Program-made: the position numbers and the translations under genes
In this document: in pieces, positions 5,193 through 33,550 of the stretch
How the letters are laid out: the number at the start of each line of letters is the position of its first letter
Numbering within the stretch: position 1 is the first letter of the stretch
Notes under the pieces: generated by a model
Databases searched by the model: none
Seen by the model: only the letters and a program-made list of their open reading frames with translations
What the model was told of the DNA's origin: nothing
From: Mobula hypostoma
Taxonomy: Eukaryota
DNA: 33,806 nucleotides
Assembly: GCF_963921235.1 (NCBI RefSeq)
Contig: NC_086109.1
Location: 12,338,001-12,371,806 of the forward strand
Reading direction: 5' to 3'

Positions 5193-8100
5193 ATGAAATT
5201 TGGAACCTGGAATATATGAACTCTGATGGATAATCCAAACTCAGAAGGACCAGAGAGGAGAACTGCCTTTGTTGCCCAGGAACACCAAAAATTCAACTTT
5301 GACATTGTTGCTCTGAGTGAGACCCACAGAGCTGGAGAAGGACAACTGAAGGAAGAGCAAGGTCAATACACCTTTTTCTGGAAAGGACTTGATCCTGAAC
5401 AACCGAGGATCCATGGAGTAGGTTTTGCCATCTGAAACAGCCTACTTCAGAAGCTGACAGAACAACCATCGGGAATCAACGAACGTCTCATGACTCTGCG
5501 GATCCAACTTGTCGAGAACCAACACGCCACCATCATCAGCACCTATGCTCCAACTCTGGACGCTGAAGATGAAGTAAAGATGAACTTCTACGCCCAACTT
5601 GATCACGTCCTTTCCTCTGTTCCCAACAAAAACAAGATCATTCTCTTGGGAGACTGCAATGCCAGAGTCGGGAACAATCATAGGCTCTGGACTGGATAAT
5701 AAGCAAGGAAGGAGTTGGCAAGGTCAACGCCAATGGAACACTCGTCCTCACCAAATGTGCTGAACACAAGCTGGTGATTACAAACACCCTATTTCACCAG
5801 AAAAACAGGCACAAAGTCTCCTGGCAGCATCCACGCCCCAAACACTAGCACCTCATCGACTACATCATCGTACGATCTCGGGACCAACAAGATGTACTGA
5901 TAACAAGAGCTGTTACTGGTGCTGACGAGTGCTGGACAGACCCTCGACTCATCTCGTCCATCATGAGAATGTAGATTCAGCCCAAAAGGAAACACCAAAA
6001 TCAGAACACTTAAGAAATTTAATATTGACATCCTTCAAGACATCAGCCATGTACAGAAGTTCCAACAAAATCTTCAAGAACAACTGCCTCAACAAATCCC
6101 ACCATCTGTAGAAGAACACTGGAATCAATTGAAGAAGGCTATCATCACCTCCTGCAAAGAAACAATTGGGTTCAAGACGAAAAAACATCAGGATTGGTTC
6201 GATGATAACAACAAACTACTCCAACAACTCATCGACAAAAAGAGAAAAGCTTTCATTACCTTACAATACGACCAACAATCGGCTACCAAAAGGAAACACT
6301 ATCAGGAATGCAAGGCTGCAGTTCAGAAGAGCACCTGAAACCTGAAAAGCCAATGGTGGAGGAAGAAAGCTCAGGAAGTCCAACAACTAGCAGACGCCAA
6401 TGACAAGCGAGGCTTTTTCAACGCAACTAAAGCTATTTTTGGCCCATCCACTCATGGTCAAGCCCCTCTCAAAATCAAAGATGGTTCAACCATCCTGAAG
6501 AGCAATGCTGACATCAATTCTAGATGGAGGGAGAACGTTGAAGATCTTCTAAATCAAACTGTCTCATTTGACAGGAATGTGATTAACAACATTCCAAAAC
6601 AGCCTGTTGTCGACTCCCTAAGCAAAAAGCAACACTTGAAGAAGTCAAGGAAGCCATCAAAACCTTGAAAATCAACAAGGCCACTGGACTCGATGGAATA
6701 TCAGCCAAGGTCTACAAATTTGGAGGTAACCCGCTTCATTATCAACTGCATTAACTTCTCATCAAGATTTGGATAAATGAATATGTACCAGCAGACTTTA
6801 GAGACTCAGCAATGGTTATCATCTACAAAAGGAAAGGCAATCGATCCAAATGCAGAAACTATCATGGTATTTCCCTGTCAGCAACAGCAGGAAAGGTCCT
6901 CACCCGTATCATGAACAATCGGCTCAGGCCTTTAGCTGAGAAGATCCTTCCGGAGACACAAGCCGGTTTTAGACCACCACATGGAGCAATCGACATGATC
7001 TTCACAATGCGACAACTATAAGAAAAATGTCGTGAACAACTTCAACCTTTGTACTTGGCATTCAATGACCTCACCAAAGCTTTTGACTTGGTATCAAGGG
7101 AACTCCTATGGGATGTCCTATCCACCTTTGGATGCCCTGAAAAGTACATTTGAATCCTGAGACTCCTCCATGATGGCATGCTTGCCACAGTCATGGTCAT
7201 CAACAGTAACTGTGAGTCTTTTCAAGTTAGATCAGGAGTAAAACAGGGATGCATGATTGCTCCAACTTTGTTCACCATCTTCATTGCGACAATCATCCAC
7301 ATTATCAAGGACAACCTACCCTCAGGAATCGAAATCGTCTACAGAACAGATGGCAGACTTTTCAATCTTGCCTATCTCAAGTCCAAAACAAAGACATCTA
7401 CAAGTTCCCTCATTGAGTTCTAATACGCAGATGACAAGTTTTGCAGCTCTTTCAGAAAACCATCTACAACAGATTCTGACTGCCTTCAACTGTGCATACA
7501 TGAAACCTGAACTTACCATCAATTCCAAGAAGACTCAGATCATCTATCAACCGTCACTAATTGAGACAAATCGGATAGAACCCTCAATTCAATTTGGCGA
7601 AACAACCCTGGAAACCGTGGACCACTTTCCGTACCTTGGAAGTCACCTCTCCTCCAATGTCGACCTTAATGACGAGATCCAACATCGTATTAAATGTGCC
7701 GGAACAGCTTTTGGACATCTCCGAACAAGAGTCTTTCATGATCGTGACATCCGAGCAGACACCAAAATGTTACTGTACAAAGCAGTGGTAATCCCAACAC
7801 TCCTGTATGCATCAGAAACCTGGACATCATACCGACGACATCTGAAGGCACTTGAAAGGTTCCATCAACGCTGTTTTCGAAACATCTTAAATATCAGCTG
7901 GGAAGATAGAAGAACCAACATCAGTGTGCTAAATGAAGCAAAAGCACAAGCATTGAAGCCTACGTCATCAAGAACCAACTAAGATGGAGCGGTCATGTTG
8001 TTCGGATGAAAGACGAACGTCTGCCGAAACAAATCTTCTGCTCCCAGCTTAAAGAAGGCAAACGTAAAAGAGGCGGACAACAGAAGAGATTCAAAGATGT

Positions 8101-8371
8101 CTTAAAAGCCAACATGAAGAAATGTAACATTGACATCAACAATTGGGAAACCAATGCCAAGGACAGGAAACCCTGGCAAATCATCATCCGAGAAGGAACA
8201 GCAACTTTCAAAGCCAACAGATGTGCAGAATTAGAAGAAAAGAGAAGAAAACAGAAAGAGAGGCAGCAACAACCAAAGCCTGATCTGCCATCTGGAACTA
8301 CCTGCCCTGAATGCGGAAGAACTTTCAAAGCCAAGATTGGACTCATAAGCCACTTTAGAGCCCATAAGTAG
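5193..8371 (+). pseudogene. RTE ORF (APE endonuclease, RT, C-terminal C2H2 finger) with multiple stops and frameshifts
   Basis: MKFGTWN, ALSET, YAPT, GDCNARVG, NYHGISLS, GVKQGC, YADD-equivalent, FPYLGS, CPECGRTFKAKIGLISHFRAH. Confidence 0.93.
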
Positions 8372-13557: not shown

Positions 13558-13940
13558 CAGGAGCATTCGATGGCTCTGGGTCTGTTCCCACTGGAGATTA
13601 GAAGAATGGGGAGGGGGTCTCATTGAATATTGAAAGGCCTATATAGAGTGAATGTGGAGAGGATGTTTCCTGTAGTAAGGAAGTCTACAACTAGATGACA
13701 CAGCCTCAGAGTACAAGGCCATTCCTTTAGAACAGAGACGAGGAAGAATTTCTTCAGGCATATGGTGATGAATCTGTGAATCCACTTCAACAGATGGCAG
13801 TTCAGGCCAAGTCATTGGATATATTTGAAATGGAGGTTGATAGGTTCTTGATTATTGAAGGTGTCAAAAGTTATGGGAGAAGGCAGGTGAATGGGGTGGA
13901 GAGGGCCTAATTTTGCACCTATGCCTTTGGTCTTTTGGTC
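13558..13940 (+). mobile_element. CR1 3' fragment
   Basis: LGLFPLE-RR-G-LIE-like RT end and 3' UTR with TGGTC tail. Confidence 0.8.
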
Positions 13941-13947
13941 CTCTAAT

Positions 13948-14128
13948 ACAGGCACCAATTTGATGAATCTCTTCTGCAACATGAATTCTTGAATGTTCAA
14001 TGCTCATCCAATGACAGAAGCCCTCTTTACCACCTACTTTACCATCCCCCTCTGTTCCAAATCTCAGGGAGTTATGGACTTGCACCCCAAGATCCGTACA
14101 TCGTTCTGGACCTGCCTTGGTGACAATT
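13948..14128 (-). mobile_element. CR1 RT fragment
   Basis: rc resembles RDLGVQVH...VKRASV...GIE region. Confidence 0.6.
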
Positions 14129-14163
14129 CAAACAAACAAGAGACACAAGAAAGACATGACATG

Positions 14164-14262
14164 AGACCTGATGAATGGTCTTGGCCTGAAAGGTCGACTG
14201 TTTACTGTTTTCCATACATGCTGCCTGACCTGCTGAGTTCCTCCAGGTTTTTGCGTGTGTTG
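14164..14262 (+). mobile_element. PLE-terminus short repeat with degenerate hammerhead
   Basis: AGAC CTGATGA ATGGTCTTGGCCT GAAA GGTC GACT followed by ATGCTGCCTGACCTGCTGAGTTCCTCCAG...GTGTGTTG. Confidence 0.85.
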
Positions 14263-14589
14263 TGATCATTCTATCAAACCTGTTTTTGGGAACTTGCTGC
14301 TGAGGAAGGAGTAAAGTGGGAAATAGGTTTGATGTAGAAGGGGCTTTTCATGCAAACTCAGCAGACATACTTGGCTTCATTCCCTCTCCTCTCTGAAGGC
14401 TGATTCCACCATACGAAGCAATTTTTAAAGCTCACTTCTTCTGAATTCTATTCCATCTGTAGGTGCAATTTCAGGAGCTCTGATGGGATTTCACTTTGCT
14501 TCAGTTAGATGTGAGGGGAAACCAACTGAATGGAATTGCACATTCACAAAGGTAAAATCCACATCAGATCTGTTCTTAAACCAGATCAA

Positions 14590-15717
14590 GCAACACACAT
14601 CAAAGTTGCTGGTGAACGCAGCAGGCCAGGCAGCATCTCTAGGAAGAGGTACAGTCGACGTTTCAGGTCGAGATCCTTCGTCAGGACTAACTGAAGGAAG
14701 AGTTAGTAACAGATTTGAAAGTGGGAGGGGGAGGGGGAGATCCAAAATGATAGGAAAAGACAGGAGGGGGAGGGATGGAGCCAAGAGCTGGACAGGTGAT
14801 TGGCAAAGGGGATATGAGAGGATCGTGGGACAGGAGGCCCGGGGAGAAAGACAAGGGGGGGGGGAACCCAGAGGATGGGCAAGGGGTATAGTCAGAGGGA
14901 CAGAAGGAGAAAAAGGAGAGTGAGAGAAAGAATGTGTGTATAAAAATAAATAATGGATGGGGTACGAGGGGGAGGTGGGGCATTAGCAGAAGTTAGAGAA
15001 GTCAATGTTCATGCCATCAGGTTGGAGGCTACCCAGACGGAATATAAGGTGTTGTTCCTGCAACCTGAGTGTGGCTTCATCTTTACAGTAGAGGAGGCCG
15101 TGGATAGAATGTCAGAATGGGAATGGGATGTGGAAATAAAATGTGTGGCCACTGGGAGATCCTGCTTTCTCTGGTGGATAGAACGTGGGTGTTCAGCGCT
15201 CCCAGTCTGCGTCGGGTCTCTCCAATATATAGAAGGCCACATCGGGAGCACCGGACGCAGTATATCACCCCAGCCGACTCACAGGTGAAGTGTCGCCTCA
15301 TCTGGAAGGACTGTCTGGGGCCCTGAATGGTGGTAAGGGAGGAAGTATAAGGACATGTGTAGCATTTATTCCGCTTACAAGGATAAGTGCCAGGAGGAAG
15401 ATCAGTGGGGAGGGATGGGGGGTATGAACGGACAAGGGAGTCGCATAGGGAGCAATCCCTGTGGAAAGCAGGGGGGGGGAGGGAAAGGTGTGCTTAGTGG
15501 TGGGATCCCGTTGGAGGTGGCGGAAGTTGCGGAGAATAATATGTTGGACCCGGAGGCTGGTGGGGTGGTAGGTGAGGACCAGGGGAACCCTATTTCTAGT
15601 GGGGTGGCGGGAGGATGGAGTGAGAGCAGATGTGCGTGAAATGGGGGAGATGCGTTTGAGAGCAGAGTTGATGGTGGAGGAAGGGAAGCCCCTTTCTTTA
15701 AAAAAACAGATTTTTCA
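14590..15717 (-). mobile_element. Neptune-type Penelope-like element, 5'-truncated (linker, GIY-YIG endonuclease, 3' terminus)
   Basis: PCKRNKCYTCP Cys linker and HFTCESAGVIYCVRCSRCGLLYIGETRRRLG; 14-bp TSD TTAAACCAGATCAA (14576-14589, 15718-15731). Confidence 0.93.
14653..14688 (-). ncRNA. Minimal type I hammerhead ribozyme motif
   Basis: AGTC-CTGACGA-AGG(ATCTCGA)CCT-GAAAC-GTC-GACT: intact core, 4-bp stem I, 3-bp stem II, palindromic loopless stem III (ACGT). Confidence 0.8.
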
Positions 15718-16172
15718 TTAAACCAGATCAACACCATTTTGACAGGAAATGGTCTGTGTGAATAAACAACCCCTGTTGTTTCTATTTCCCATAGAATCAT
15801 AGGGCACAGTAAATGTATAGGTCATACTTGTCCAAGGAGAAGACATTTCTATCTTACCTATCTCACCCCAATGGTCTCCTTGACACCAGACCCTGTATAC
15901 CTTTGCTCATCTTCACCATTGCTAGTTTCCCAATATACCTGTGATGATGGTTAGATCTTCCAATGTTACTCAAAGTGTGATCTATCCAAATTCATACTGT
16001 GCGATTCCCTGGGGCAGATGAAGTCTGAGGAGAGCTTCAGTACAAGGCAGTACAACAGTTCTCACATGTCACACATATTGGAGAAGTAATGCAGAATCAG
16101 AATCAAAATCAGGTTTCATATCACCAACATAGTGTACATCATGAAATTAACTGTAGTGGTCCAAATTGTTCA

Positions 16173-16237
16173 CTATCTATTCTTTTCCATAGATGCTGCC
16201 TGACCTGCTGTGCTCCTCCAGCATTTTGTGTGTGTTG
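16173..16237 (+). mobile_element. PLE-terminus short repeat (3'-most part only)
   Basis: CATAGATGCTGCCTGACCTGCTGTGCTCCTCCAGCATTTTGTGTGTGTTG. Confidence 0.8.
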
Positions 16238-17204
16238 TTTCATTGTTCAATCATGATTTCATTGGAATGTGAGGGTTGAGGTGACCCAAGAATGTAGCTC
16301 ATTTATATTTTCCTGATTTTTTTGTTGCTGACTTTGCAATGGTTTATAAACACTTAATTTCACATTGTATATAAATAGACAAATGATAAAATAATTCATG
16401 ATACACGGACAGCCTTTGTTACTTTGGGTTTGTTACATTTGTTTTAGGGGAAAACAGTGCAGCGTACTATCCATGAATGTTATCTGCTTTAATGTTGTAC
16501 GTTGTGTAATATGAGTGCTAAATCCATTGCATCAACCACTCCCGTCATCTGTGTAATGTTCACCCTCAGCAACGGATGTGGTTAGAACCCCTGTCTTCTT
16601 TACTTGTCTTACCAAACAGAATATTGAGAAGTGCCAATGGATGCTACAAATAGTCAAATGTGGTCTCTTCCTGCATGGCCCTATCACTTTTTGGAAAACT
16701 TCTCAACAACCATGGTTCAATACGCTGATGTGAGCAAGTGCAGAGATACAAAACATCTTTGTGTCTTCTGGTCTTCTGGTCTATGGTGTTAAGAGATGGA
16801 GCAATGCAGGAAGAGGATGGAACAATTTGTTTGCATGAGCCATCCATTGGTCCTTCCCTAAATTCTGTTTTGTAAGTAAAGATACACAAGTTACAACCAT
16901 ATCCTTTTGGAATTGCTTTTGGATGTCCTCGGAAAGGGAAAGGGTCCCGTTCAGAGTCAGAATCAGATGTGAAGTTTGTTGTTTTGCAGCATAAATAAAG
17001 AAAGCAAGTTTCTTCCCTCGCACAATTAATTATCTCAGGTATAACAGGTCCTGATTCACAAGTGGGACCACAGCATCTGGAATTATCTCCAGCTATCCAC
17101 ACACATCAGGTAACCCTGACCCGAAGAACTCATGAGCTCTAAACAGACTCTGGTGTTATTGCTTCACATCCCCACATAGCAGGTGAAGGATATCATGTCA
17201 TATT

Positions 17205-19570
17205 CCATAAGACCGTAGATATAGGAACAGAATTAGGCCACTTGGCCCATCAAAACTGCTCCACCATTTCATCATGGTTGATCTAAATTTTCTCTCAGCC
17301 CCAATCTCCTACCTTTTCCCAGTATTTTTTCATGCCCTGATCGATCAAGAATCTATCAATCCTTGTCTTAAATACAGATAAAGGCTTGGACTCCACAGCT
17401 GCCTGTGGCAAAGAGTTCCACAGATTAACCGCCCTCTGTTGAAAGAAATCCTTCCTTGTCTATGTTCTGAAAGGACACCCCTACCCCTTATTCTTAGGTT
17501 GAGTCCACTGGTCTTTAATTCTTCTACCATAGGAAACATCTTCTCTACCTCTACTCTGTCAAGGCTTTACACCTTTCGATAGTTTTCAATTAGGTCATCC
17601 CTTATTCTTTTGAATTCTAATGAATACAGACCCAGAGCCAACAGACACTCTTCATATGAGAAGTCAATCAATCCTGTAAACATTTATGTGAACCTCCTTT
17701 GAACCCTCTCCAGCTGAGCACATCCTTTCTAAGATAAGGTGCCCAGACCTGCTCACAATACTCCAAGTAAGGCCTCACCAGCACTTTATAAAGTTTCAAC
17801 ATTACACCTTGTGTTTATATTCCAGTATTCTTGAAATGAAAATTAACATTGCATTTGCCTTTCTCACCAGAGACTCAAGCTGCAAATTAACCTTTGGGGA
17901 ATCCCACACAAGGACTCCCATGTTCCTTTGTGTCTCAGATATTTGTATTTATTCTCCATTTAGAAAATGGTCAACACTTTCATTTCTTCTACCAAAGTGC
18001 ATGACCATAAACTTCCCTACACTGTATTCCATCTGCCATTTCTTCAAACATTCTCCTAATCTGTTTAATTCCTTCTGTAGCCTCTCTACTTTCTCAAAAC
18101 TACCTGACCCTCCACCTATCTTCATATCGTCTGCAATCTTTGCAACAAAGACATCAATTCCATCATCCAAATCATTGACATACAAGGTAAAAAGAATTCA
18201 TCCCAACACAGACCCCTGTGTAACACCATTAACCATTGGCAGCCAACCAGAAAAGACTCCCTTTATCAACACACACAAAATGCTGGAGGAACTCAGCAGG
18301 CCAGGCAGCATCTATGGCAAAAAGCATAGTCAACATTTCGGGCCAAAACTCTTTTGCAGGACTGGAGAAAAAAGCTGAGGAGTACTCAGCTACTCATCTA
18401 CACATTATCTCTTGTTTGTGATATTAAGACTCCCTTTATTCCCACTCTTTGTGTCCTGTCAGTCTGCCACTGCTTTATCCATGCTAGAATCTTCCCTGGA
18501 ATACCATTGGCTCATAGCTTGTTAATCAGTCTCATGTGTGGCACCTTGTCAAAGGCCTTCTGAAAATCCACATACACAACACCAACTTTGTCTATCCTGC
18601 TTGTTATTTCTTCAAAGAATTCCAACAAATTTTTCAGGCAAGATATTCCCTTAAGGAAACCATGCTGACTATGGACTATTTTATCATGTGCCTCCAAGTA
18701 TTCTGAAACCACATCTTTAACAATCAACTCCAACGTCGTTCCAACCATTGAGGTCAGACTAACTGGCCTATAATTTCCTTTCTTCTGTCTCTCTCTCTTT
18801 TTGAAGAGTGGGGTGACATTTGAAACTTTCCATTCCTTCAGAACCATTCCTGAAGCAATTGATTCTTGAAAGATCACTACTTATGCCTCCACAATTTCTT
18901 CAGACGCCTCTTTCAGAACCTCATGTTATACCATCTGGTCCAGGTGATTTATTTACTTTCAGACCTTTCAGTTTCCCAAGAACTTTCTGCATAGTAATGG
19001 CAACTTCACACTCTTCTGCCCTCTGACCCACCTGAATTTCCAGCATACTGCAAATGTCTTTCACAGCAAAGACTGATGCAAAATACTTGTTCAGTTTATC
19101 CTCCATTTCCTTGTCACCCATTATATCTCTTCAGCATCATTTTCCAGCAGTCCAATATCCACTCTTGCCTCTCTTTTACACTTAATGTATCTGTAGAAAC
19201 TTTTGGTGTCCTCTTTAATGTTGTTGGCTATTCTACTTTTGTATTCCATCTTTATCTTCTTAATGACTTTTTTAGTTGTCTTCTGTTAATTTTTAAAAGC
19301 TTCGCCATCTTCTAAGTTCCCACTAATCTTTCCTCTATTATATGCCCTCTCTTTGGCTTTTATGTTGGCTTTGACTTCTCTTGTTCATGGTTGTGCATCT
19401 TTCATTTAGAATACTTCTTCCTCTTTGGTATGTAAATGTCTTGTGCCTTCTGAATTGCTTCCAGAAATTTCACCCATTGCTACTCTACTGCCATCCCTGC
19501 AGTGTTCTTTTCCAATCAATTCAGGCCAACTCCCCTCGCATGTCCGTATTTACCTTCACTACACTGTAAT
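17205..19570 (-). mobile_element. CR1 LINE fragment with nested PLE insertion
   Basis: ORFs 17949-18185, 18512-18877 and 18921-19121 (NYRPVSLTS, DFQKAFDKVPH, NKSPGPDG); CCATAAGACC tail at 17205. Confidence 0.93.
18267..18425 (-). mobile_element. PLE-terminus insertion with fold-back and filler
   Basis: 14-bp TSD AAGACTCCCTTTAT (18253-18266, 18426-18439); degenerate hammerhead 18328-18363. Confidence 0.88.
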
Positions 19571-19579
19571 ACAGATAGA

Positions 19580-20045
19580 ACGTTTGTGTCACCAGAAGAT
19601 TCACCCTGAGATTCATTTTCTTGCAGGCATTCATAGTAGTGCAAATGAATACAATAGCATCAATTAAAAACTACATACAGATATGTACAAACAACATGCA
19701 AAGGAAGACAAACTATGGAAATACAATGAATAAATAAGGATATAATATGGAGGAGATGAGATGTAGAATCTTTGAAAGTGATTCCATAGGCTGTGTTCAG
19801 TGATAATATCAGTGTTGAGGTGACTGAAGTTATCCTCCCTGGTTCAGGAGCCTGGTGGCTGCCCTGTTCCTGAACCTGTTAGTTCGGGAACTGAGCTCCA
19901 GTACCTCCTTCTGCTCGGCAGCAGCGAGAAGAGAGCATGTCTGGATGATGTGGGTCCTCGATGATGGATTCTGCTCTCTTGTGGCAGGTCTCCTTTGTAG
20001 ATGTGCTCACTGGTGGTCTAGGCTTTACCTATCAACTGATCAGGT
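19580..20045 (-). mobile_element. Rex/Babar-type LINE 3' fragment
   Basis: Shares the ACCCTGAGATTCATTTTCTTG...GAAGTTATCC segment with 25875-26165 and 31580-31845. Confidence 0.7.
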
Positions 20046-20274
20046 CAGTCTTAACCAACCTCCATACAGACCGTCCCTGAGGAATGAATGGGTCTGTTTT
20101 TACAGATACCTGTAAGTCAATTTTACCCTTATGTCAGAAAACACAACAGATATCACTCAATATGTTATCCATACTTACATACTATTGTAATGAAAGGCAA
20201 TAACTGCATATAAAACTGAGGTGAAAGAGTAATTTTGAAAAGTGGAAGGAAAGAAAACTCGTTCTGTTATTTAT

Positions 20275-20680
20275 AGGAACATAGAACAGCACAGTACAGG
20301 CCTTTTGGCACAGAATATTGTGCCAATCTATACTTCTTGATGAATCTAATCCTTCCCTCCTACACAGCACATAACCCTCCATATTCATACACATGACACA
20401 CCTTCTTTAACACCCTTTCAATTTGCACAGCAACTTTGAGGAATCTACGGACTTGCAACCCAATATCTCTCGGTTCCTCCACATTGCTCAGAATCCTGCC
20501 ATTAACCTTGTAATCTGCCTTCAAGTTCGATCATCCAAAGTGTATCACTTCACATTTTTCTGTGTTAAACTCCATCAATCACTTCTCCACCCAGCGCCAC
20601 ATCCTGTCTTTACCCTGTTGTAATTTGTGACAAGACTCTAGACCATCCACAATACCGACAATCTTTGTGTCACGTGCAAA
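20275..20680 (-). mobile_element. CR1-type 3' end plus CR1 RT fragment
   Basis: GAACATAGAAC tail; rc of FARDTKIVG...FNTEKCEVIHF-like segment. Confidence 0.65.
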
Positions 20681-20683
20681 CAT

Positions 20684-21038
20684 TACTGCAGAAGTCGTAG
20701 GCATGTATCAAAATATTCTGTAAAGTGAAGATGCTTTCAGAAATAATGAAATGAGAAGTAAACAGTAAAAACAAAACATTAAATCAATATTTGGTGAGAC
20801 TATCCTTTGCCTTTAAAACTGCATCAATCCTCTTAGCTGCACTGTTGTGCGGTTTTATAAGAAAATTATCTGGTAGGTTGCCACAGTTCTTCTCCAGACT
20901 TTGGCTGATGTGCTTGCCTCTGAACCTCCAGATAATCGCAAACAGCCTCACTGATGTTGAGATTAGGGCCCTGTGGAAGCCATAGCTTCTGAAACCATAT
21001 AAAAAATCTACAACGCCTGTGACTTTAACACAGTACTG
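20684..21038 (-). mobile_element. Tc1 family B internal-deletion derivative
   Basis: Ends resemble TACTGTGCAAAAGTC / ACACAGTACTG; ORF 20784-21041 resembles a Tc1 C-terminus; paralogous to 25368-25768. Confidence 0.75.
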
Positions 21039-21256
21039 CACATTGGAGTTTTGAATTCAGTCACATTACTAAGGCTCGTTCATTTGTAGAAGTGTCCATA
21101 AGTCAGATTGTCATAACTTGGGAATGAACTGTATTGTCTCTTATCCTACACAGCACTCCTCTGACTAGATCTGCTTTCTAAACCAACACTCGTCCACTTC
21201 TAAGCCGGATCTGAGGATGGATCCCTGAAGTGAAACTGTGTTTGATGAAAGGTCCT

Positions 21257-21496
21257 TGTTATGGTTTGTAGCTCCAAAACAGTAAAATACTTCAAAGGAA
21301 AGCCGAGAAATGTAAATCTTAGTTTCTGTTTTTACTTTAAGTGAGGTGCGCATGTATCATGTGTTGGTGTCATGATATATGCAATTCAAGTCTTTTACTT
21401 ATAATCTGTATTTAATTATTTAAACAAACAAGAGTACTTAATCAAACAATATGTACAATATTATTCAAATATTACTAAAATATTAAATACACAACA
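21257..21496 (-). mobile_element. Gypsy 3' LTR (240 bp)
   Basis: TGTTGTG...CCATAACA on minus, directly preceded by the polypurine tract. Confidence 0.75.
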
Positions 21497-21825
21497 CTCC
21501 TCCCTGCTTAGCGGTAAATTGCAACTCAATATGGTATGTATCTCAACCATATACAAAGTATGATATATCATGCAACTACTATTTGCAGATATCCATGGCA
21601 TAGTAAATTTTAATTTGTCCCATTCAGACCTAAAGAATTAATCGCTGTGAAGGATTTCCTGCTCTTATGGGACAACATTTTTTCTGACAAATCGGATTAC
21701 TCTGCCTGGCAGTTAAAACTTTTGGCTGTGAAATCTCAGGTTCCAGGGCCTCCTCTGTGGTGGTTACAGGAACTGACTCTAAACCTGCAGGAAGTGGTTC
21801 TGACAGCTCTGAACATTTTTCTTCT
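21497..21825 (-). mobile_element. Gypsy integrase C-terminal tail, 3' UTR and polypurine tract
   Basis: EEKCSELSEPLPAGLESVPVTTTEEALEPEISQP...PIRAGNPSQRLIL* (RxPxRL-type end); PPT TAAGCAGGGAGGAG at 21497-21510. Confidence 0.75.
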
Positions 21826-22366
21826 CCTTCCTTTTTCTTCTTTTAGTTTATGCATCTTGATGCTGGGAAGGTGCAATGAGTTCACTGAAGTATTCTCTTT
21901 TGAATCCCTCTATTTCTCCCATTACAATCTGATCTGTCCTTTTGGTTTTCTCATCCACATCATCATTTGGTGGATCCCCTGCTTTCGACTCTCCATTGAC
22001 TCCTTTCCATTTGACCTTCCATTAATCCAGCTGGGCGTCTATTTTTACAAGCAGCTTTTAGTCTCTTACTTGAAGTTCATGCAATAAACATAATGCACGC
22101 AGAGTAGATTCTTTGTATTCACAAAAGCCGAATGCTTGCAACTTTCTTGAAACTTCTTGAACTCTCTCCTAGCTTAAAACCAAGCCATATTTCACAGATA
22201 ACTGTCTGACTAACATGCCAGGAACTTTCACTGATATGTTGCCCACAAAAACCGTTGTAGTCAGACCAGTGCTTTCGTCACTTTCACACTTCTATTGAAA
22301 AGCATGGTCCTTCCTTGTTCCAATATGCTTTCCAACCAGAAGTACAGAGGTTGGCACCAACACTGG
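21820..22366 (-). pseudogene. RBM25: Intronless RBM25 fragment (RRM region) embedded in the Gypsy element
   Basis: One continuous frame with five stops: PVLVPTSVLLVGKHIGTRKDH...TTTVFVGNISVKVPGMLVRQLSVKYGLVLS*ERVQEVSRKLQAFGFCEYKESTLRALCLLHELQVRD*KLLVKIDAQLD*WK...REYFSELIAPSQ...KRKEKK; collinear with vertebrate RBM25 as recalled. Confidence 0.93.
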
Positions 22367-22407
22367 TTAGTTCTCTGTTAGGCAATGGTTCATGTTTTTC
22401 TGCATGG

Positions 22408-22679
22408 AGACAGTTGTGGCATCGTCCAGTACCTTTTTTAAATTTGTTTTCAGTTGGCTTCTTTGCAGGGGTTATGACATGCAAATTATTGAACGGATTT
22501 CCAACCAAGTAGTAGTTGTCAATGTGGCTTGTTGTTGTTGTTGTATTTCACAGTTACAAATGTCATTCCCACAGGAATTGCCTTTTCTCCTGGATAGGTT
22601 CTTAGTTGAATATCTGCAGGCTTCAGCTTGGAATCTTTGAAATGTTGCTCAAACTTATTTTGTGGAATGACTGAAACAG
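22408..22679 (-). mobile_element. Gypsy protease to pre-RT region
   Basis: SVIPQNKFEQHFKDSKLKPADIQLRTYPGEKAIPVGMTFVTVKY...LGWKSV...VLDDATTV; truncated just after the expected DTG motif. Confidence 0.8.
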
Positions 22680-23195
22680 GTGAATGATTTAAACCTTCTC
22701 CTGTGTTTATGGTCTTATGGTCCTGACTCCCTCAAGAAAATCCAGGAGCCCGAATGTGATCTGTTTGCCATGTATAAAGTTTTATTCTCATCTAAGCCTA
22801 AAGGATAAATGACTTATTAACACCAGCAGTTTATAAGCAAGTATCTTAACTGATAGCTTATTAATCATTGGAATATCTAACAGCAACGACCTCTGGCATT
22901 TAAATCCATAGAAGAGAGTTTAATAGAGTAAAATGGTCTTAAGCAGTTCACAGCTGTGACAGGGCTAAAAATAGTTGCTGTGGCAAAAAATAAAAGGTGC
23001 CACAATATTGAGATCAGTGGGGGTGACATGTTGGAAATGGAATGCTTAAAAATAATGTCTTGAAGTACGGTAACATTATTTTTTCACCTTCATGAAGTTA
23101 ATAATTTAATGACAAGAGAGGTTAATTTTTTCATAAATTGGGAAGAATATTTTATCTTGGTGCAAAATTCGAGCAGTCAGAAGCCTTCACTTTAC

Positions 23196-23234
23196 CTAAG
23201 GGACCAGGTTGTGAGGATCTGATACATTGCCACT
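23196..23234 (-). CDS. Candidate terminal cytoplasmic exon of receptor gene 2
   Basis: attgccttttgcag acceptor; SGNVSDPHNLVP* in phase 0 after the TM exon; TAG directly followed by gtaaag. Confidence 0.5.
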   Translation of the reverse strand, partial: SGNVSDPHNLVP

Positions 23235-23489
23235 CTGCAAAAGGCAATGGTCAAATCTTCAGACCCATCGACACTGGGAACTCTGCTATGCAGTTGTACC
23301 TGGAGCTTGGACTCCAATATATGTACATCAAACATTCTGCACACATACAGTGTGTCAACATCTTGTCAATATCATCTGCAAATATCTTTGTATTGATCAT
23401 TGGATAAGAAAAGGTCAATGTGTTTAAATGTCTTTCCTCAAATGATCAGTATATTTGAAAGCAAATTCCACTGATGTCCAGAAGCCTAC

Positions 23490-23580
23490 CTCAGTTTTCC
23501 TTGTGAACCATGTGACTGAAATCATGCAGATCATCAGCAGAGTGAAGAGCAGCCAACGGTCCACCTTCCATATTATGAAA
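23490..23580 (-). CDS. Transmembrane exon of receptor gene 2
   Basis: Strong acceptor tctcttcccctttactcag, GAG|gtaggc donor; FIIWKVDRWLLFTLLMICMISVTWFTRKTE, no stop. Confidence 0.8.
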
Positions 23581-23649
23581 CTGAGTAAAGGGGAAGAGAT
23601 ACAGAATTGATGAAATTAAGCAAGATGGCTTTGTGTTTGAAACATTTAC

Positions 23650-25367: not shown

Positions 25368-25768
25368 CAGTGCTGTGCAAAAGTCTTCTGCACATGTAAA
25401 ATAATTCTGTATAGTGAAGATGCTTTCAAAAACAATGAAATGAAATGTTTCTGAATAACAAGGAGCAAGAAACAATAGTAAAATTAAATGAAATCAATAT
25501 TTGGTGTGACCATCTTTTGCCTTTAAATCTTCATCAGTTCCTCTAGGGATCTTGTCATGCAATTCTATAAGAAAATCAGCTGGTGGGTTGTTCGAAGAAT
25601 ATTGGAGAACTTGCCACAGTTCGTCTGCAGACTTTGACTGTCTCACTTGTTTCTGCCTCTCCAGGTAATCCCAGACAGCCTCAATGATGTCGAGATCAGT
25701 ACTCTCTGGAGCCCATACCATCTGAAACAATAAAAATCTAGGGGGCATAAGATATTTGCACAGTACTG
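25368..25768 (-). mobile_element. Tc1 family B internal-deletion derivative
   Basis: TA TSD both sides; TIRs CAGTGCTGTGCAAA / TTTGCACAGTACTG; WAPESTDLDIIEAVWDYLE...GHTKY transposase C-terminus. Confidence 0.9.
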
Positions 25769-25874
25769 TAGATGGATGTGCAATGGAAAGCCACATGGTC
25801 TTTGTCTGTGCTATACGTCTCTGGGACTGTATGAATCTGTTACACAACAGGATGTGAACCCTGATTCTTATCAT

Positions 25875-27160: not shown

Positions 27161-28140
27161 ATGTTTAATGAGAAGGCTCAAGGAAATGTGAAGAAAATTA
27201 ACCTGTTTGGGCTAACAGCAACTCTGGCAAGTAAGATAGGGGAAATAGTATTTGCAGAAGTCCTTAATGATGGCAACCTATTGGTAAAATGTGCGAATGA
27301 GGATCAACTTGAGAAAGTACTCAAGCTAAAAGAGATAGGAAAATGCAAGGTGGAATACTCAAGGAGGGTGAGGGCACGAAATAGCAGTGTATGTAAAGGA
27401 GTGATCACGGGGGTACCAATAAGTATAAATATGGAGGAGTTAAAGAGAAATATCAAAGGAGGAAAAGTAATAAATGTTCAAAGATTGCAAACAAGAAAGG
27501 AAAGAATGAAAAAAGAAGGTGAAACAGTATCGATTGAATTTGAAGAAGAAAGAGTGCCAAGGAAGGTGTTCCTGGGTTTCATGAGTTACCCAGTAAGGGT
27601 GTATGTGCCAAAGCCATTGAGGTGCTATAATTGTCAAAGGTTTGGACACAAGCTAAAAACTGTAAAAGGCAGAGGAGATGTGCTAGATGTGGGGGTGATC
27701 ATGAATATGGAAAGTGCGGAACAGGAGTGCAACTAAAATGCTGCAATTGTGGAGGAGCTCATAATGTTGCATATAGTGGGTGTGAGGTTATGAGACGGGA
27801 GAATAAAATTCCAGAAATAAGAGTGAAAAGAAAGATCACTTATGCAGAAGCTGTAAGAATATCAAAAGAACAGAATAATGCTTCTAATGAACAGGGAGCA
27901 ATAGGGATGCAAGAGTTGCAACAAAGAACACATGACAGGATTTATGTAGACAAAAAGGCTCTAGTCACATTCATTGCAGGAGTGATTAATAGTACAGCTG
28001 AGGTAAAGTCAGAAAGTGATAAAATTCAGCTGGTGGTCAAAGCAGCAATGAACCATTTAGGGTTAATAGGACTGACATGGGAGGAAGTGAGGGAGAACCT
28101 CACTAATCAGTCAAGCCAGAAAGTGTCATGGGTTGGTTAA
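27161..28140 (+). pseudogene. Nimb ORF1 (one frameshift near 27650)
   Basis: CYNCQRFGH...C, CARCGGDH...C, CCNCGGAH...C. Confidence 0.88.
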
Positions 28141-28148
28141 TACTAATT

Positions 28149-29795
28149 ATGGTGATTCTTTTACAATGGAATGCAAGGAGCTTACTGGCCAATAGCCAGG
28201 AATTCAAGCACTTCATTAAAGAAATGGTTGTAAAACCAGATGTAGTATGTATTCAGGAAACTTGGTTGAAACCAACTTTAGACTTTGTGGTATATGGGTA
28301 TACAATGATAAGGAAAGAGAGAATTCTAGGGGGAGGAGGGGGTTGTGCAATGTTAATCAAACAAGGTATACCATATAGGATATTGGAAAAAGGAGATGAT
28401 CAGGAATACATAGTGGTGGGAGTGTGGGAAAGAGGGGAGGGAATGGTTATAATTAACTACTACAATCCATGTAAAATGTTGGATATGGACAGCCTATTAA
28501 GGATACAAAGACAAAACAGACATAAACTAGTGTGGTGTGCAGATTTCAATGCTCATAGCACAATATGGGGGATACGATTACAGATTCAAATGGAAAGGTA
28601 ATTGAAGATTTGATGGAAGAAAGGGATTTGGTGTGCATGAATGATGGTAGAGGAACAAGGATAAACTTAACAACAGGAACTGAGTCAGTATTAGATATTA
28701 CGTTGGTGTCTAATACGTTGGCTGGTGTTAGTAACTGGGGGGTTTGGACTGCTTCAGCAGTAGGCAATGATCACTACCCAGTTTTATGTTCAGTGGGTGA
28801 AATAATTGAAGTAAGACCAGGTGGTGGAATCCCAAAGTGGGTTGTCAAGCTGTAAAAAACAGAAATAGAGCATTCAGGCTAGTTAAAAGAACCCATAATA
28901 TGCAGCATTTGATTCAGTATAAGAAGGCACAGGCAGTGGTGAAAATAACTATACGTCAAGCTAAAAGGGCAAGTTGGAGGAGTTTTTGCAACAAAATAGG
29001 AAGAACAACACCTCTGGGAGAGGTATGGGGAATGATTAAGAGGATGGGGGGGGGAATATCCAGTAATGATATCGGAGGAGGAAACAGCAGTCTCCAGTAG
29101 GGATAAGGCTGAGATCATGGCCAAGTCGTTTGTACAGATACACGGTTCAGAAAATTTGTCTGAAGAAGGGAGAAGGAGAAGGGAAAGAACAATGGATCAA
29201 CACCTAGGTGTGTTAACAGGAGGGAAGAAACAGATGATCCATTTACGCTGGCAGAAATGGTGAGAGCAATAAAGACATCAAGACCAACCTCCCCAGGGAA
29301 AGATCTGATATGCTATGTTATACTGAAAAATCTAGGAGAAGGAGCACTCTTGAAGTTGCTGCATTTTTATAACAGAGTGTGGAAGGAGGACAGATTACCA
29401 AGTGCATGGAAAGAAGCAGTAGTAATTCCAATTAGGAAACCTGGCAAGGATCCGTCAAAACCCACTAGCTACAGATCAATAGCATTAACATCAAATATAT
29501 GTAAGATAATGGAAAGGATGATAACAGAAAGGTTATCGTATGCGGTTGAGAAGAGAGGAATGCTGGCAAGTTACCAGAGTGGTTTTAGGAAGGGAAGGAA
29601 TTCCATGGACTCAGTGATAAGGTTAGAGACTGAAATAAGAAAGGCCCAGGCAAATAAAGAGTCAGTAGTTGCAGTGTTTTTTGACATTGAAAAAGTCCAT
29701 GATATGATGTGGAAGGAAGGATTGTCAATTAAACTGCACAAGATGGGGGTTGTGGGAGAGTTTTTAATTGGATTAAAGACTTTTTGTTTGGTAGA
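28149..29795 (+). pseudogene. Nimb ORF2 remnant (APE, deleted linker, partial RT)
   Basis: ORFs 28128-28601, 28565-28855, 28837-29100, 29066-29263, 29257-29841. Confidence 0.88.
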
Positions 29796-30110
29796 CATGT
29801 CATTATCATCAAAACAGTCCCAATGTTTTCTGAACTTTTAACCAAGGATGTTTTTTTGCAGACATTGAGGAAGGTGGATTAAGTAAACAGTGTTTTTCGA
29901 TATCCTCTGGGTATTCCAGTTGGATGTTTTCCCTAAACGACGCCTGATGGTACTGTTGGGTGGCAGTGTCAACCAGGTGCTCAAGTCTTAGCCATGGACT
30001 GGTCTGCTTCTTGTGAACCCTCCTCTTTTTCATGAGCCTGATGGATGTGGTGCTATGGATTAGCTGATATCCGTCTCGCAGTCATCTATGTCTATCATGG
30101 CACTTGCGAT
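29796..30110 (-). mobile_element. Old RTE fragment (EN-RT linker)
   Basis: Frameshifted KKRR...PEDIEKHC...KFRKHWDCFDDND, collinear with 5930-6215 of the large RTE (KKHQDWFDDN). Confidence 0.7.
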
Positions 30111-31854: not shown

Positions 31855-32187
31855 AATAAAAAAGGTGCTGGCTATTCAATCTACTTATGTTTCCTACCAT
31901 TATTAACACCTTTCTCAAGTCACCAAGAGAAAAACCCGAGCTCACTCAACCTATCCTCATAAAACATGTTGTCGATACAGGGCATCATCCTGGTAAGTCT
32001 CTTCTAAAGCTACTGCATGCTTTCTATATTGAGGTGACTAGAACTGAACACAATACTCCAAGTGTGGACTAACCAGAGTTTTTCGAGCTGAAACGTTACC
32101 TCAAGGCTCTTGAATTCAATCCCCCGCCGAATGAAAGCCAACACACAACGTGCTTTGTTAGCCACCCTATCGACTTGCATGGCAAGT
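31855..32187 (-). mobile_element. CR1 RT fragment
   Basis: QVDRVANKARCVLAFIRRGIEFKS...LVHTWSIVFS. Confidence 0.85.
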
Positions 32188-32484
32188 TCCTGTTCATGTC
32201 TAGGCAAAGGTCTTTTAGTAGACCAAGACAAGACAGGGAGATAAACAAAATCTCGGGTGACATCTACTATTGGACTGTCTGAGCCGATTTGTCTTTTTAC
32301 TTTAACGTATCTCCAAGGTAACACCAGCAATTGAAAGTGGGTGCACCCCTTTCTCCCACCCTCTCCACCCTCCACAAGCCACCACCATCAATCACATCAC
32401 AGCAGTTATATTTCATGTGGCAGTAGTGTCAATCAAAACACTGGTATTGAGGACATTGTACCTCTCGATAGAACTGGATCTTAC

Positions 32485-33459: not shown

Positions 33460-33550
33460 TATTCTGATGAAGAGTCTGTGATGTAGAATGCTAACCGTTT
33501 CTCATTCTGCGGATGATGCCTGACCTGCTGAGATTGACCAGCAAATTATT
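33460..33550 (+). mobile_element. Old PLE-terminus short repeat
   Basis: CTGATGAAGAGTC...GATGATGCCTGACCTGCTGAG. Confidence 0.6.

What the first reader, a model, noticed from the sequence alone, without database searches (positions are those of the whole stretch)
21257..22679. Gypsy element whose RT-RNaseH-integrase core is replaced by a spliced RBM25 cDNA fragment
Seen on the minus strand in this order: Gypsy protease/pre-RT (22679-22408), an unassigned ~40-nt spacer, ~545 nt of RBM25-like coding sequence with the RRM in one unbroken frame and no introns (22366-21820), then integrase C-terminal tail, PPT and 3' LTR. No poly(A) tail or TSD flanks the insert. The 3' junction is a purine-rich overlap (AGAAGAAA) read as KEKK in the RBM25 frame and EEKC in the Gypsy frame. 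Established: vertebrate RBM25 encodes this region over several exons, and LTR elements can capture host mRNA by template switching. Inference: host splicing-factor mRNA was transduced into an LTR retrotransposon. The ORF track misses it because five stops break the frame.
Basis: partly seen in the sequence, partly recalled or inferred. Interest (0 to 1): 0.88.

Follow-up and report, generated by a model that had tools for sequence, protein, structure and literature searches.

The report
Retrotransposon copy carrying captured RBM25 exons
This is a decayed, front-truncated copy of a very abundant LTR-retrotransposon family whose polymerase genes were replaced by four spliced exons of the host splicing-factor gene RBM25, a large vertebrate example of a known process (gene capture by LTR elements).

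Summary
On the minus strand, 22363-21818 is one unbroken reading frame with six stops and no frameshift. It matches RBM25 in every one of 124 orthologues tested (best E 1e-55). It is colinear with four consecutive RBM25 exons, and three introns are missing; the yak and bowfin genes have identical intron positions.

It is flanked by a retropepsin-like remnant with its linker (22720-22364). On the other side lie a short pol tail, a polypurine tract and an LTR that starts with TG at 21496.

The locus is not a one-off. Public reads of its own species and two others lay thousands of diverged contigs on 21361-22720, and distinct contigs bridge both junctions. Flanking DNA is low-copy. The scan had already flagged the same chimera 26 times on other pieces of this genome; those notes are unchecked.

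This copy is old, 5'-truncated and dead.

The insert starts exactly at an exon's first base. It ends in a purine tract at or within about 12 nt of an exon's last base. So splicing of a chimeric read-through transcript rivals pure template switching as the capture route.

The Gypsy assignment rests only on weak evidence.

It is a new, unusually amplified member of the known class "LTR-mediated retroposition".

The parts
22522..22720 (-). Retropepsin-like (protease) remnant. It is the 5'-most part of the element kept at this locus; the copy is truncated just upstream of the N-T-G (D-T-G-like) motif.
   Evidence: Summed contig depth jumps from about 40 (22721-22821) to 15,000-21,000 (22620-22720) in run X1, and likewise in X2, X5 and X9. 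The nearest ESM-Atlas clusters are all retroviral aspartyl protease families (RVP_2, Asp_protease_2, gag-asp_proteas) at score 0.92, which is a lead only. Pfam and PDB gave nothing.
22364..22521 (-). It is in the same frame as the RBM25 part. This copy has a private deletion near 22537 and a 2-nt expansion at 22535.
   Evidence: Contigs of other copies continue through this stretch into the RBM25 part (table 8: X2 records 7 and 8; X21 15 and 16; X22 24; X23 28, 29, 31 and 32). At 22537, 224-270 contigs carry other sequence that reads as a protease motif (table 7). 2 nt are left out at 22535 in most depth (table 4).
21827..22363 (-). Captured RBM25 segment: exons b, c, d and e (about residues 53-240 of mammalian RBM25), without introns. 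Exon junctions lie at 22193|22192, 22135|22134 and 21992|21991. There are five internal stops.
   Evidence: tblastn E 7e-51 to 1e-55, single frame. Exon maps of yak L001 and bowfin L002. Nucleotide alignment.
22052..22252 (-). The RRM domain inside the captured segment.
   Evidence: Pfam RRM_1 covers residues 51-119 of P0004 and 89-157 of P0005, mapped through the tblastn alignment.
21812..21826 (-). 3' junction zone. This purine-rich stretch fits both the end of RBM25 exon e and the element's tail, so the breakpoint cannot be placed more finely.
   Evidence: In X2, 81 + 73 contigs share the window's sequence up to 21825/21826 and then carry other upstream sequence (table 7). RBM25 HSPs end at 21818, with some at 21812. 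The nucleotide alignment reaches the last base of exon e at 21815. The tract is 86% purine.
21633..21825 (-). C-terminal tail of the element's pol ORF (putative integrase tail), ending at stop 21632-21630. It is one base out of frame with the RBM25 part in this copy.
   Evidence: 70-codon open piece. High copy number. It is shared with copies that lack the RBM25 part (table 7). No family was recognised, so its identity as integrase is inferred from position only.
21497..21509 (-). Polypurine tract immediately upstream of the LTR.
   Evidence: Read directly from the sequence: a purine run followed by TG at 21496-21495.
21361..21496 (-). 3' LTR. The start is well supported. The end near 21361 is tentative and could extend towards 21208.
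   Evidence: 323-395 contigs per run match up to 21496 and then run on into mutually unlike sequence (agreement 0.34), as expected of 5' and solo LTRs (table 7). The 21408-21508 bin has the highest depth in the stretch. Depth falls within 21307-21407, and the exact-match unique contig ends at 21356. The termini read TG...CA. Against the short LTR: one contig of organism C spans 21208-21429 (record 25).

Best explanation
The locus is a dead, 5'-truncated copy (about 1.36 kb, minus strand, roughly 22720 to 21361) of a non-autonomous LTR-retrotransposon family. In that family the RT-RNaseH-integrase core is replaced by four spliced exons of host RBM25, comprising the RRM plus about 35 residues before it and 60 after it.

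Shown: the capture happened once at RNA level, because introns are absent and the same two junctions recur in many copies. The chimera then multiplied to hundreds or thousands of copies in at least three species.

Inferred: the family kept LTR, PPT and, in full copies, gag-protease. It was therefore copied and integrated by the RT and integrase of a related autonomous element supplied in trans.

Inferred, about 60:40 over pure template switching: the 5' junction was made by splicing. The element transcribed through into RBM25, and a donor ending ...CAG in the protease-RT linker was spliced to the acceptor of exon b. The 3' join back to the element's tail was made in a purine-rich tract at the very end of exon e. 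It arose either by splicing into a second element copy or by a microhomology-guided template switch during reverse transcription.

The RBM25 piece is most likely passive cargo.
For: RBM25 identity and single frame.

Intron loss at three positions conserved between a mammal and a holostean fish.

The insert is an internal mRNA fragment without poly(A).

High copy number. 14,768 (X1) to 18,027 (X2) contigs were laid on 3 kb at 80% or better. Summed depth is 1e3-6e4 on 21361-22720 against 30-200 on the flanks, in organisms A, B and C. More than 100 distinct contigs overlap single positions inside the RBM25 part (table 3).

Both junctions are bridged by distinct diverged contigs (table 8: 5' junction by X2 records 7 and 8, X21 15 and 16, X22 24, and X23 28, 29, 31 and 32; 3' junction by X2 record 1 and X23 record 25).

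Where most other copies differ from the window, their letter restores the RBM25 residue at 14 or more places and at two of the six stops, 22369 and 22024. The ancestor therefore had an open RBM25 frame, and this copy decayed.

The LTR start has random upstream flanks in hundreds of contigs.

Exon-boundary fit. RBM25 similarity begins at the first base of exon b, and 22363 is the modal HSP start for 57 of 124 proteins. It ends 0-12 nt from the last base of exon e.

A copy-rich class with another upstream sequence reads ...TTGTTAG just before the shared tail, which looks like an acceptor (table 7).
Against: No RT, RNase H, integrase, gag, PBS or second LTR lies in this window. So 'LTR retrotransposon' rests on the PPT, the LTR boundary and a weak protease lead.

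Pfam, PDB and word-based searches did not recognise the protease or the tail.

The host's own RBM25 gene and the autonomous partner were not available, so exon boundaries are borrowed from yak and bowfin, and the donor and acceptor ideas are untested.

The 3' breakpoint is ambiguous within a low-complexity tract.

The tool warns that summed contig depth is not a copy number.

In this copy the tail is out of frame with the insert.
Confidence: 0.8

Rival explanations
1. Same chimeric family, but both junctions were made by reverse-transcriptase template switching between a co-packaged RBM25 mRNA and the element's RNA. This is the LTR-mediated retroposition model of Tan et al. 2016. The match of the insert's ends to exon boundaries is then coincidence.
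For: The anatomy is what that model predicts: a partial mRNA replaces part of the internal ORFs, there is no poly(A) and no TSD around the insert, and there is microsimilarity at the 3' junction of up to 9-12 nt in the purine tract 21826-21815 (PMC5131818 read).
Against: No microsimilarity is evident at the 5' junction.

The 5' limit falls on the first base of an exon, and the 3' limit within about 12 nt of an exon end. With mean exon length 143 nt, my rough estimate is a chance of about 4% times 9%. The model says switch points can occur anywhere.
Confidence: 0.35
2. An ordinary LINE-made processed pseudogene of RBM25, primed internally on the A-rich lysine-codon tract, landed in one Gypsy copy and deleted its pol core. 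That damaged copy was later amplified.
For: The insert's 3' end lies in an A/G-rich tract that could mimic a poly(A) priming site. Active-looking LINEs are abundant in the window.
Against: The insert lacks the whole 3' two-thirds of the mRNA and any poly(A). No target-site duplication flanks it. It would need a simultaneous deletion of more than 3 kb. The 5' end at an exon start is not expected from random 5' truncation.
Confidence: 0.07
3. A single local accident: a chance nesting of an RBM25 pseudogene between two unrelated Gypsy scraps, or an assembly chimera, present only at this locus.
For: Only one copy and one LTR are present in the window.
Against: Thousands of diverged contigs from four DNA runs of three organisms cover the stretch, and several bridge each junction. 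Exact-match contigs from independent runs confirm the assembly (records 1, 3, 6, 9, 12, 14). There are 26 first-reader notes of the same chimera elsewhere in the genome (unchecked).
Confidence: 0.01

Closest known systems
LTR-mediated retroposition chimeras in animals (Tan et al. 2016, Genome Res 26:1663, PMC5131818)
   Same: A partial host mRNA copy replaces part of the internal ORFs of an LTR retrotransposon. There are no introns, no poly(A) and no TSD around the insert. There is short similarity at a fusion point. The chimera can behave as a non-autonomous element and be retroposed again.
   Different: Those cases are single or few-copy and young. Here the chimera reached hundreds to thousands of copies and is shared by several species. 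Here the insert's limits also match exon boundaries, which that model does not predict.
Maize Bs1 element (Jin and Bennetzen 1994; Elrouby and Bureau 2001, 2010; as cited in PMC5131818)
   Same: An LTR element that lost pol and carries spliced fragments of host genes downstream of gag. [quoted passage not shown]
   Different: Bs1 has 1-5 copies, carries pieces of three genes, and is a plant element. This family carries one gene's four exons and is massively amplified in a vertebrate.
Host mRNA capture by crocodilian endogenous retroviruses, KIT-ligand and nectin3 (Chong et al. 2014, PMC4299795)
   Same: A vertebrate LTR retroelement lineage carries a spliced host mRNA. The lineage multiplied after capture and predates speciation.
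   Different: Those are ERVs with a handful of copies and whole ORFs under purifying selection. Here only an internal fragment of the gene was taken, pol rather than env was replaced, and the copy studied is riddled with stops.
Acute transforming retroviruses (classical oncogene transduction model: read-through or spliced virus-host transcript, then recombination with helper RNA). Recalled from memory, not checked here.
   Same: A defective, helper-dependent element in which spliced host exons replace replicative genes. The 5' join can be a splice from a viral donor to a host exon acceptor. The 3' join is made by non-homologous or microhomology recombination during reverse transcription.
   Different: There is no evidence of infection, of selection for the captured gene's activity, or of any phenotype. 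This is an intragenomic retrotransposon.
LINE-generated processed pseudogenes
   Same: An intronless copy of a host mRNA that decays with stops.
   Different: There is no poly(A), no TSD and no mRNA 3' end. The insert is embedded at fixed junctions in a mobile element and is multiplied with it.

Membership tests
RBM25-derived sequence | Significant similarity to RBM25 over the RRM and over the non-domain flanks specific to RBM25 | tested here: met
   phmmer returned only RBM25 hits. tblastn gave E 7e-51 to 1e-55 for 124 of 124 orthologues, as a single HSP.
RBM25-derived sequence | Presence of the ER-rich region and the C-terminal PWI domain (a full-length gene copy) | tested here: not met
   Only about residues 53-240 are present. 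PWI maps to residues 518-583 of P0005 and has no match in the window.
Retrocopy of spliced mRNA | Colinear with consecutive exons, with introns absent at conserved intron positions | tested here: met
   Intron positions are identical in yak and bowfin. The junctions map to adjacent bases in the window. The host's own gene was not available.
LINE-mediated processed pseudogene | 3' end of the mRNA with a poly(A) tail, flanked by a target-site duplication | tested here: not met
   The insert ends inside the coding region in a purine tract. There is no poly(A) and no direct repeat at its edges.
LTR retrotransposon | Polypurine tract abutting an LTR that starts with TG, with the LTR start recurring with unrelated upstream flanks | tested here: met
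   Sequence at 21509-21495. 323-395 contigs per run diverge at 21496 with agreement 0.34.
LTR retrotransposon | Two LTRs in direct orientation, a PBS, and a TSD at the element ends | tested here: not met
   There is no second LTR or other copy in the window. This copy is truncated at about 22720, so the PBS and TSD cannot exist here. Full copies were not retrievable with these tools.
Ty3/Gypsy superfamily | Gypsy-type protease, and the RT-RNaseH-integrase order with Gypsy-clade RT | tested here: inconclusive
   The protease piece has nearest Atlas clusters RVP_2, Asp_protease_2 and gag-asp_proteas at 0.92 with only 151-158 shared features. There were no Pfam or PDB hits. The AF2 model had pLDDT 57 and was unusable. 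RT, RNase H and integrase are absent by construction.
LTR-mediated retroposition chimera (Tan et al. 2016) | A partial mRNA replaces internal element ORFs and is flanked by discontinuous parts of one LTR element | tested here: met
   Protease/linker, then RBM25 exons, then pol tail/PPT/LTR, all on one strand.
LTR-mediated retroposition chimera (Tan et al. 2016) | Microsimilarity between mRNA and element at both switch points | tested here: inconclusive
   At the 3' junction up to 9-12 nt fit both partners, but in a low-complexity tract. The 5' junction could not be tested without the autonomous element.
Mobilised (non-autonomous) family | Many copies with identical junctions at different genomic places | tested here: met
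   Distinct diverged contigs bridge both junctions in three organisms, and depth is 10-1000 times that of the flanks. Different flanks of individual full copies were not directly seen.

The most novel reading that the evidence does not exclude
The captured piece is not mere cargo. In intact copies the gag-protease-linker frame runs straight into a complete RBM25 RRM, and this RNA-binding fusion protein helped the defective family outcompete its autonomous parent, for example by binding its own RNA or by disturbing RBM25-dependent splicing. Alternatively, the thousands of RBM25-homologous copies feed small-RNA silencing that cross-targets the essential host gene, creating a transposon-host conflict of the kind proposed for maize.
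Probability: 0.1. Interest if true: 0.85.

Novelty: new member of a known kind. Interest (0 to 1): 0.58.

Why it matters
Gene capture by LTR elements is documented mostly as single or few-copy events: fly, zebrafish, chicken and mouse retrocopies, maize Bs1, and crocodilian ERVs.

Here a captured fragment of an essential splicing factor has been carried to hundreds or thousands of copies and across species boundaries in a vertebrate lineage. That gives a natural experiment on three points:
- How defective chimeric elements parasitise autonomous ones.
- Whether capture goes through splicing of read-through transcripts or through template switching. The whole-exon limits make this directly testable once the host gene and the partner element are in hand.
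- Whether massive dispersal of host-gene sequence has consequences for that gene, through small RNAs, ectopic recombination, or annotation artefacts such as spurious 'RBM25-like' genes.

For this particular locus the practical message is that it is a dead repeat copy, not a gene.

Tried and rejected
Pfam on eight stop-free pieces gave nothing relevant; the pieces are too short and decayed.

PDB sequence search with the RRM piece and the protease piece gave only chance hits.

Word-indexed protein search with the protease piece and with the 57-aa RBM25 piece found no candidates. So no Gypsy polyprotein could be fetched to define the element-side breakpoints.

The Atlas did not recognise the pol tail.

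AlphaFold on the 70-aa protease piece alone gave pLDDT 57, so no fold search was run.

Repeat search and blastn found no second LTR, no other copy of the element and no TSD in the window.

There were no Rfam hits in the window.

The bacterial promoter/terminator scan is irrelevant here.

I first took the window's 6-nt loss (the missing Pro-Glu codons at 22112) for a family-wide marker separating the family from the host gene. I rejected this because 92 X2 contigs read through with those codons (table 7), so the loss is private or subfamily.

I considered the 40-nt 'spacer' as a retained end of the RBM25 intron. I rejected this because it is purine-rich rather than pyrimidine-rich, and it continues the element's open frame in other copies.

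I considered a circular-RNA template. I rejected this because the exons are in linear order without a back-splice junction.

High-depth contigs in the RNA-labelled runs (depth 100-360) probably come from the real RBM25 mRNA. They could not be separated from family transcripts, so I make no claim on expression.

Literature searches found no report of RBM25 capture.

Full report
WHAT IS AT THE LOCUS. All coordinates below are read on the minus strand. Three-frame translation of 22760-21200 shows the following, in order:
- A protease-like stretch, 22731-22522.
- A linker, 22521-22364.
- A long stretch in one frame that reads like RBM25.
- A 70-codon open tail ending at stop 21632-21630.
- A purine run, then TG at 21496.

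The stop-free pieces are too short for Pfam or PDB.

RBM25 IDENTITY. I sent the 40-aa piece 22172-22291(-) to the 1.84-billion-protein representative library. It returned five hits, all RBM25 fragments. One is named RNA-binding protein 25 of Bos mutus and carries RRM_1 plus PWI.

Local tblastn of these proteins against the window gives one HSP in one frame: 22381..21818, 54% identity over 197 aa, E 7e-51. A further search gave 469 relatives, and the 120 listed are all named RBM25 or are unnamed equivalents. All 124 proteins held hit the window exactly once. The best E is 1e-55, and the commonest limits are 22363..21818, in 57 of 124.

The frame holds six stops (22369, 22294, 22171, 22060, 22024, 21850) and no frameshift. 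Only about residues 53-240 are present. These cover the whole RRM (22252-22052) and its flanks, but not the ER-rich region or PWI.

SPLICED ORIGIN. I fetched the yak RBM25 gene (L001) and the bowfin gene (L002) and mapped their exons. Intron positions are identical in the two:
- Exon b starts with the Val codon of VLVPT, right after the acceptor AG.
- Exon b ends after ...LLA.
- Exon c ends one base into the Ala codon of AFGF.
- Exon d ends after ...SNG.
- Exon e ends after ...KKEKKED.

The concatenated bowfin exons b-e (573 nt) align to the window at 69.7% identity over 22357-21815. The three exon junctions fall on adjacent window bases: 22193|22192, 22135|22134 and 21992|21991. Three introns (4.4, 2.7 and 6.3 kb in yak) are therefore absent.

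That the host's gene has the same introns is an inference from conservation between a mammal and a holostean fish.

NOT A LINE-TYPE PSEUDOGENE. The insert is an internal piece of the mRNA. There is no poly(A), no mRNA 3' end and no direct repeat at its edges.

A HIGH-COPY FAMILY, NOT A ONE-OFF. Public runs that hold the stretch were found for the window's species (organism A, share of words 0.6-0.68), a close relative (B, 0.25-0.28) and more distant ones (C to I, 0.04-0.10).

Contigs of A, B and C were laid on 20600-23600 at 80% likeness or better. This gave 13,700-18,000 contigs per run. Summed depth was 1e3-6e4 on about 21361-22720, against 30-200 on 22721-23600 and 21105-21306. Exact-match contigs confirm the assembly (records 1, 3, 6, 9, 12, 14).

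Distinct contigs, 12-19% different from the window, bridge both junctions with at least 31 nt on each side (table 8):
- 5' junction: X2 records 7 and 8; X21 records 15 and 16; X22 record 24; X23 records 28, 29, 31 and 32.
- 3' junction: X2 record 1; X23 record 25.

I divided the summed depth by the depth of exact single-copy contigs, about 13-20 in X2. This suggests some hundreds to a few thousand copies. The figure is a rough inference, and the tool warns that depth is not a copy number.

Organism B has contigs about 95% identical to the locus (records 17 and 19). The insertion therefore probably predates the A-B split.

The scan's first readers had independently flagged the same chimera 26 times on other pieces of this genome. 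Some of those notes describe gag-protease in frame and lengths up to 5.6 kb. The notes are unchecked leads, but they agree with the read evidence.

DECAY OF THIS COPY. At 40 listed positions nearly all other copies carry a different letter. In the RBM25 frame that letter restores the RBM25 residue at 14 or more places, for example SELNAPSQ, REYSSEL, KRRDQ, SGKLQ, KASDML, MLIRQ, RALRLL and LDEW. It turns two of the six stops (22369, 22024) into sense codons.

The window also has:
- A private or subfamily 6-nt loss at 22112; 92 X2 contigs read EYKEPEST there.
- A loss of the KTK codons at 22038.
- A deletion near 22537.
- A 2-nt expansion at 22535.

The ancestor thus had an open RBM25 frame continuous with the linker. 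In other copies the junction reads through without the stop (tables 5c and 7).

ELEMENT PARTS. The LTR start is well supported. Hundreds of contigs per run match up to 21496 and then continue into mutually unlike sequence (agreement 0.34), as 5' and solo LTRs would. A purine tract abuts the TG.

The LTR end is tentative, at about 21361. It rests on the depth drop, the end of the unique contig at 21356, and the TG...CA termini. One organism-C contig spans 21208-21429, so the LTR could be longer.

The 5' limit of family homology is about 22720, inside the protease just before an N-T-G motif. A tandem 8-mer sits there. Nothing upstream in the window belongs to the element, and there is no second LTR.

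The protease call rests on my reading of motifs and on an Atlas lead. All nearest named clusters are retropepsin families at score 0.92, but with few shared features. The tail was not recognised by anything. 'Gypsy' is therefore plausible but untested.

THE JUNCTIONS.

5' junction: RBM25 similarity begins at 22363, which is the first base of exon b in both reference genes. The preceding element sequence ends ...AAACAG in most copies.

3' junction: 154 X2 contigs in two classes share the tail up to 21825/21826 and then carry other upstream sequence. One class ends ...TTGTTAG before the shared part (table 7). RBM25 similarity runs to 21818, and at nucleotide level can be carried to the last base of exon e at 21815. 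The overlap lies in an 86% purine tract, so the breakpoint is ambiguous over about 12 nt.

Both ends of the insert thus coincide, within resolution, with exon boundaries. With a mean exon length of 143 nt, I estimate the chance at roughly 4% for the 5' end and 9% for the 3' end. This is an inference, not a formal test.

MECHANISM. The anatomy is that of LTR-mediated retroposition (PMC5131818). In that class a partial mRNA replaces internal ORFs, there is no poly(A) or TSD, there is microsimilarity at a fusion point, and the chimera is re-mobilised as a pseudo-element. That model places switch points anywhere.

The whole-exon limits here fit better with a chimeric read-through transcript. In that route a donor in the element was spliced to the acceptor of exon b, as in the classical retroviral transduction model (recalled from memory). 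The 3' join would then be either a splice from the exon e donor into a second element copy or a template switch in the purine tract.

I put about 60% on splicing at the 5' junction. For the 3' junction I give no preference.

Amplification must have been in trans, because RT and integrase are missing. That is an inference. There is no evidence that the RBM25 part does anything.

COMPARISON AND NOVELTY. The closest known cases are:
- The animal LTR-retroposition chimeras and maize Bs1, which has 1-5 copies with the same switch points (PMC5131818).
- The crocodilian ERVs carrying KIT-ligand or nectin3 (PMC4299795).

Full-text searches found nothing on RBM25 capture. I file this as a new member of a known kind. 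It is unusual for its copy number, its spread over species and its exon-exact limits.

LIMITS. I could not retrieve full copies, the autonomous partner or the host's RBM25 gene. Contigs spanning the 5' junction occur in three runs labelled RNA. Those labels are guesses, so I make no claim on transcription.

Noticed in passing
window 20687-21038 and 25376-25874 (both minus strand): Two diverged copies (about 68-79% alike) of the 3' part of a Tc1/mariner-like transposase, in the same orientation 4.7 kb apart. The first abuts the low-copy stretch downstream of the LTR. The 20701-20902 bins are themselves very high copy in all runs.
   Followed up: partly
window 1723-4424 (minus strand): Long open frames of a non-LTR retrotransposon: an endonuclease-like ORF, then an RT with the FADD motif. 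It looks young. A second RT fragment of the same kind lies at 18512-19121 and 32010-32375.
   Followed up: no
window 27161-29841 (plus strand): Another non-LTR element with an ORF1 carrying CCHC zinc knuckles, followed by an AP-endonuclease-like ORF and an RT ORF.
   Followed up: no
window 14171-14263, 16146-16238, 18267-18363, 33512-33543: Copies, in both orientations, of a SINE-like core (GATGCTGCCTGACCTGCTGAG..TCCTCCAGC).
   Followed up: no
window 22721-23109 and 20957-21360: Both flanks of the element fragment are themselves low-copy repeats: 5-20 contigs at about 85%. One contig (records 5 and 13) spans 22535-23098 at 88%. So the truncated element plus its upstream flank exists at a second place, which suggests a later segmental duplication of this neighbourhood.
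   Followed up: partly
window 22288-22401: A joint skipping these 114 nt (the junction plus the first 25 codons of exon b) is seen in contigs of all three RNA-labelled runs (depth up to 96) but not in DNA run X2. Its ends are not GT..AG on either strand. It may be an expressed deletion variant. Unexplained.
   Followed up: no
window 22707-22722: A perfect tandem 8-mer (GACCATAA twice on the minus strand) sits exactly at the point where homology to the family stops. It may be a microhomology footprint of the truncation.
   Followed up: no
window 21647-22087 (plus strand): The longest ORF of the region (146 aa) lies antisense to the RBM25 insert. It has no support and is most likely a by-product of the purine-rich sense strand.
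   Followed up: no
window 8006-8371 (plus strand): A 121-aa ORF ending in a C2H2 zinc-finger motif, just downstream of an RT C-terminal fragment (7257-7982). It is probably the tail of another retroelement.
   Followed up: no
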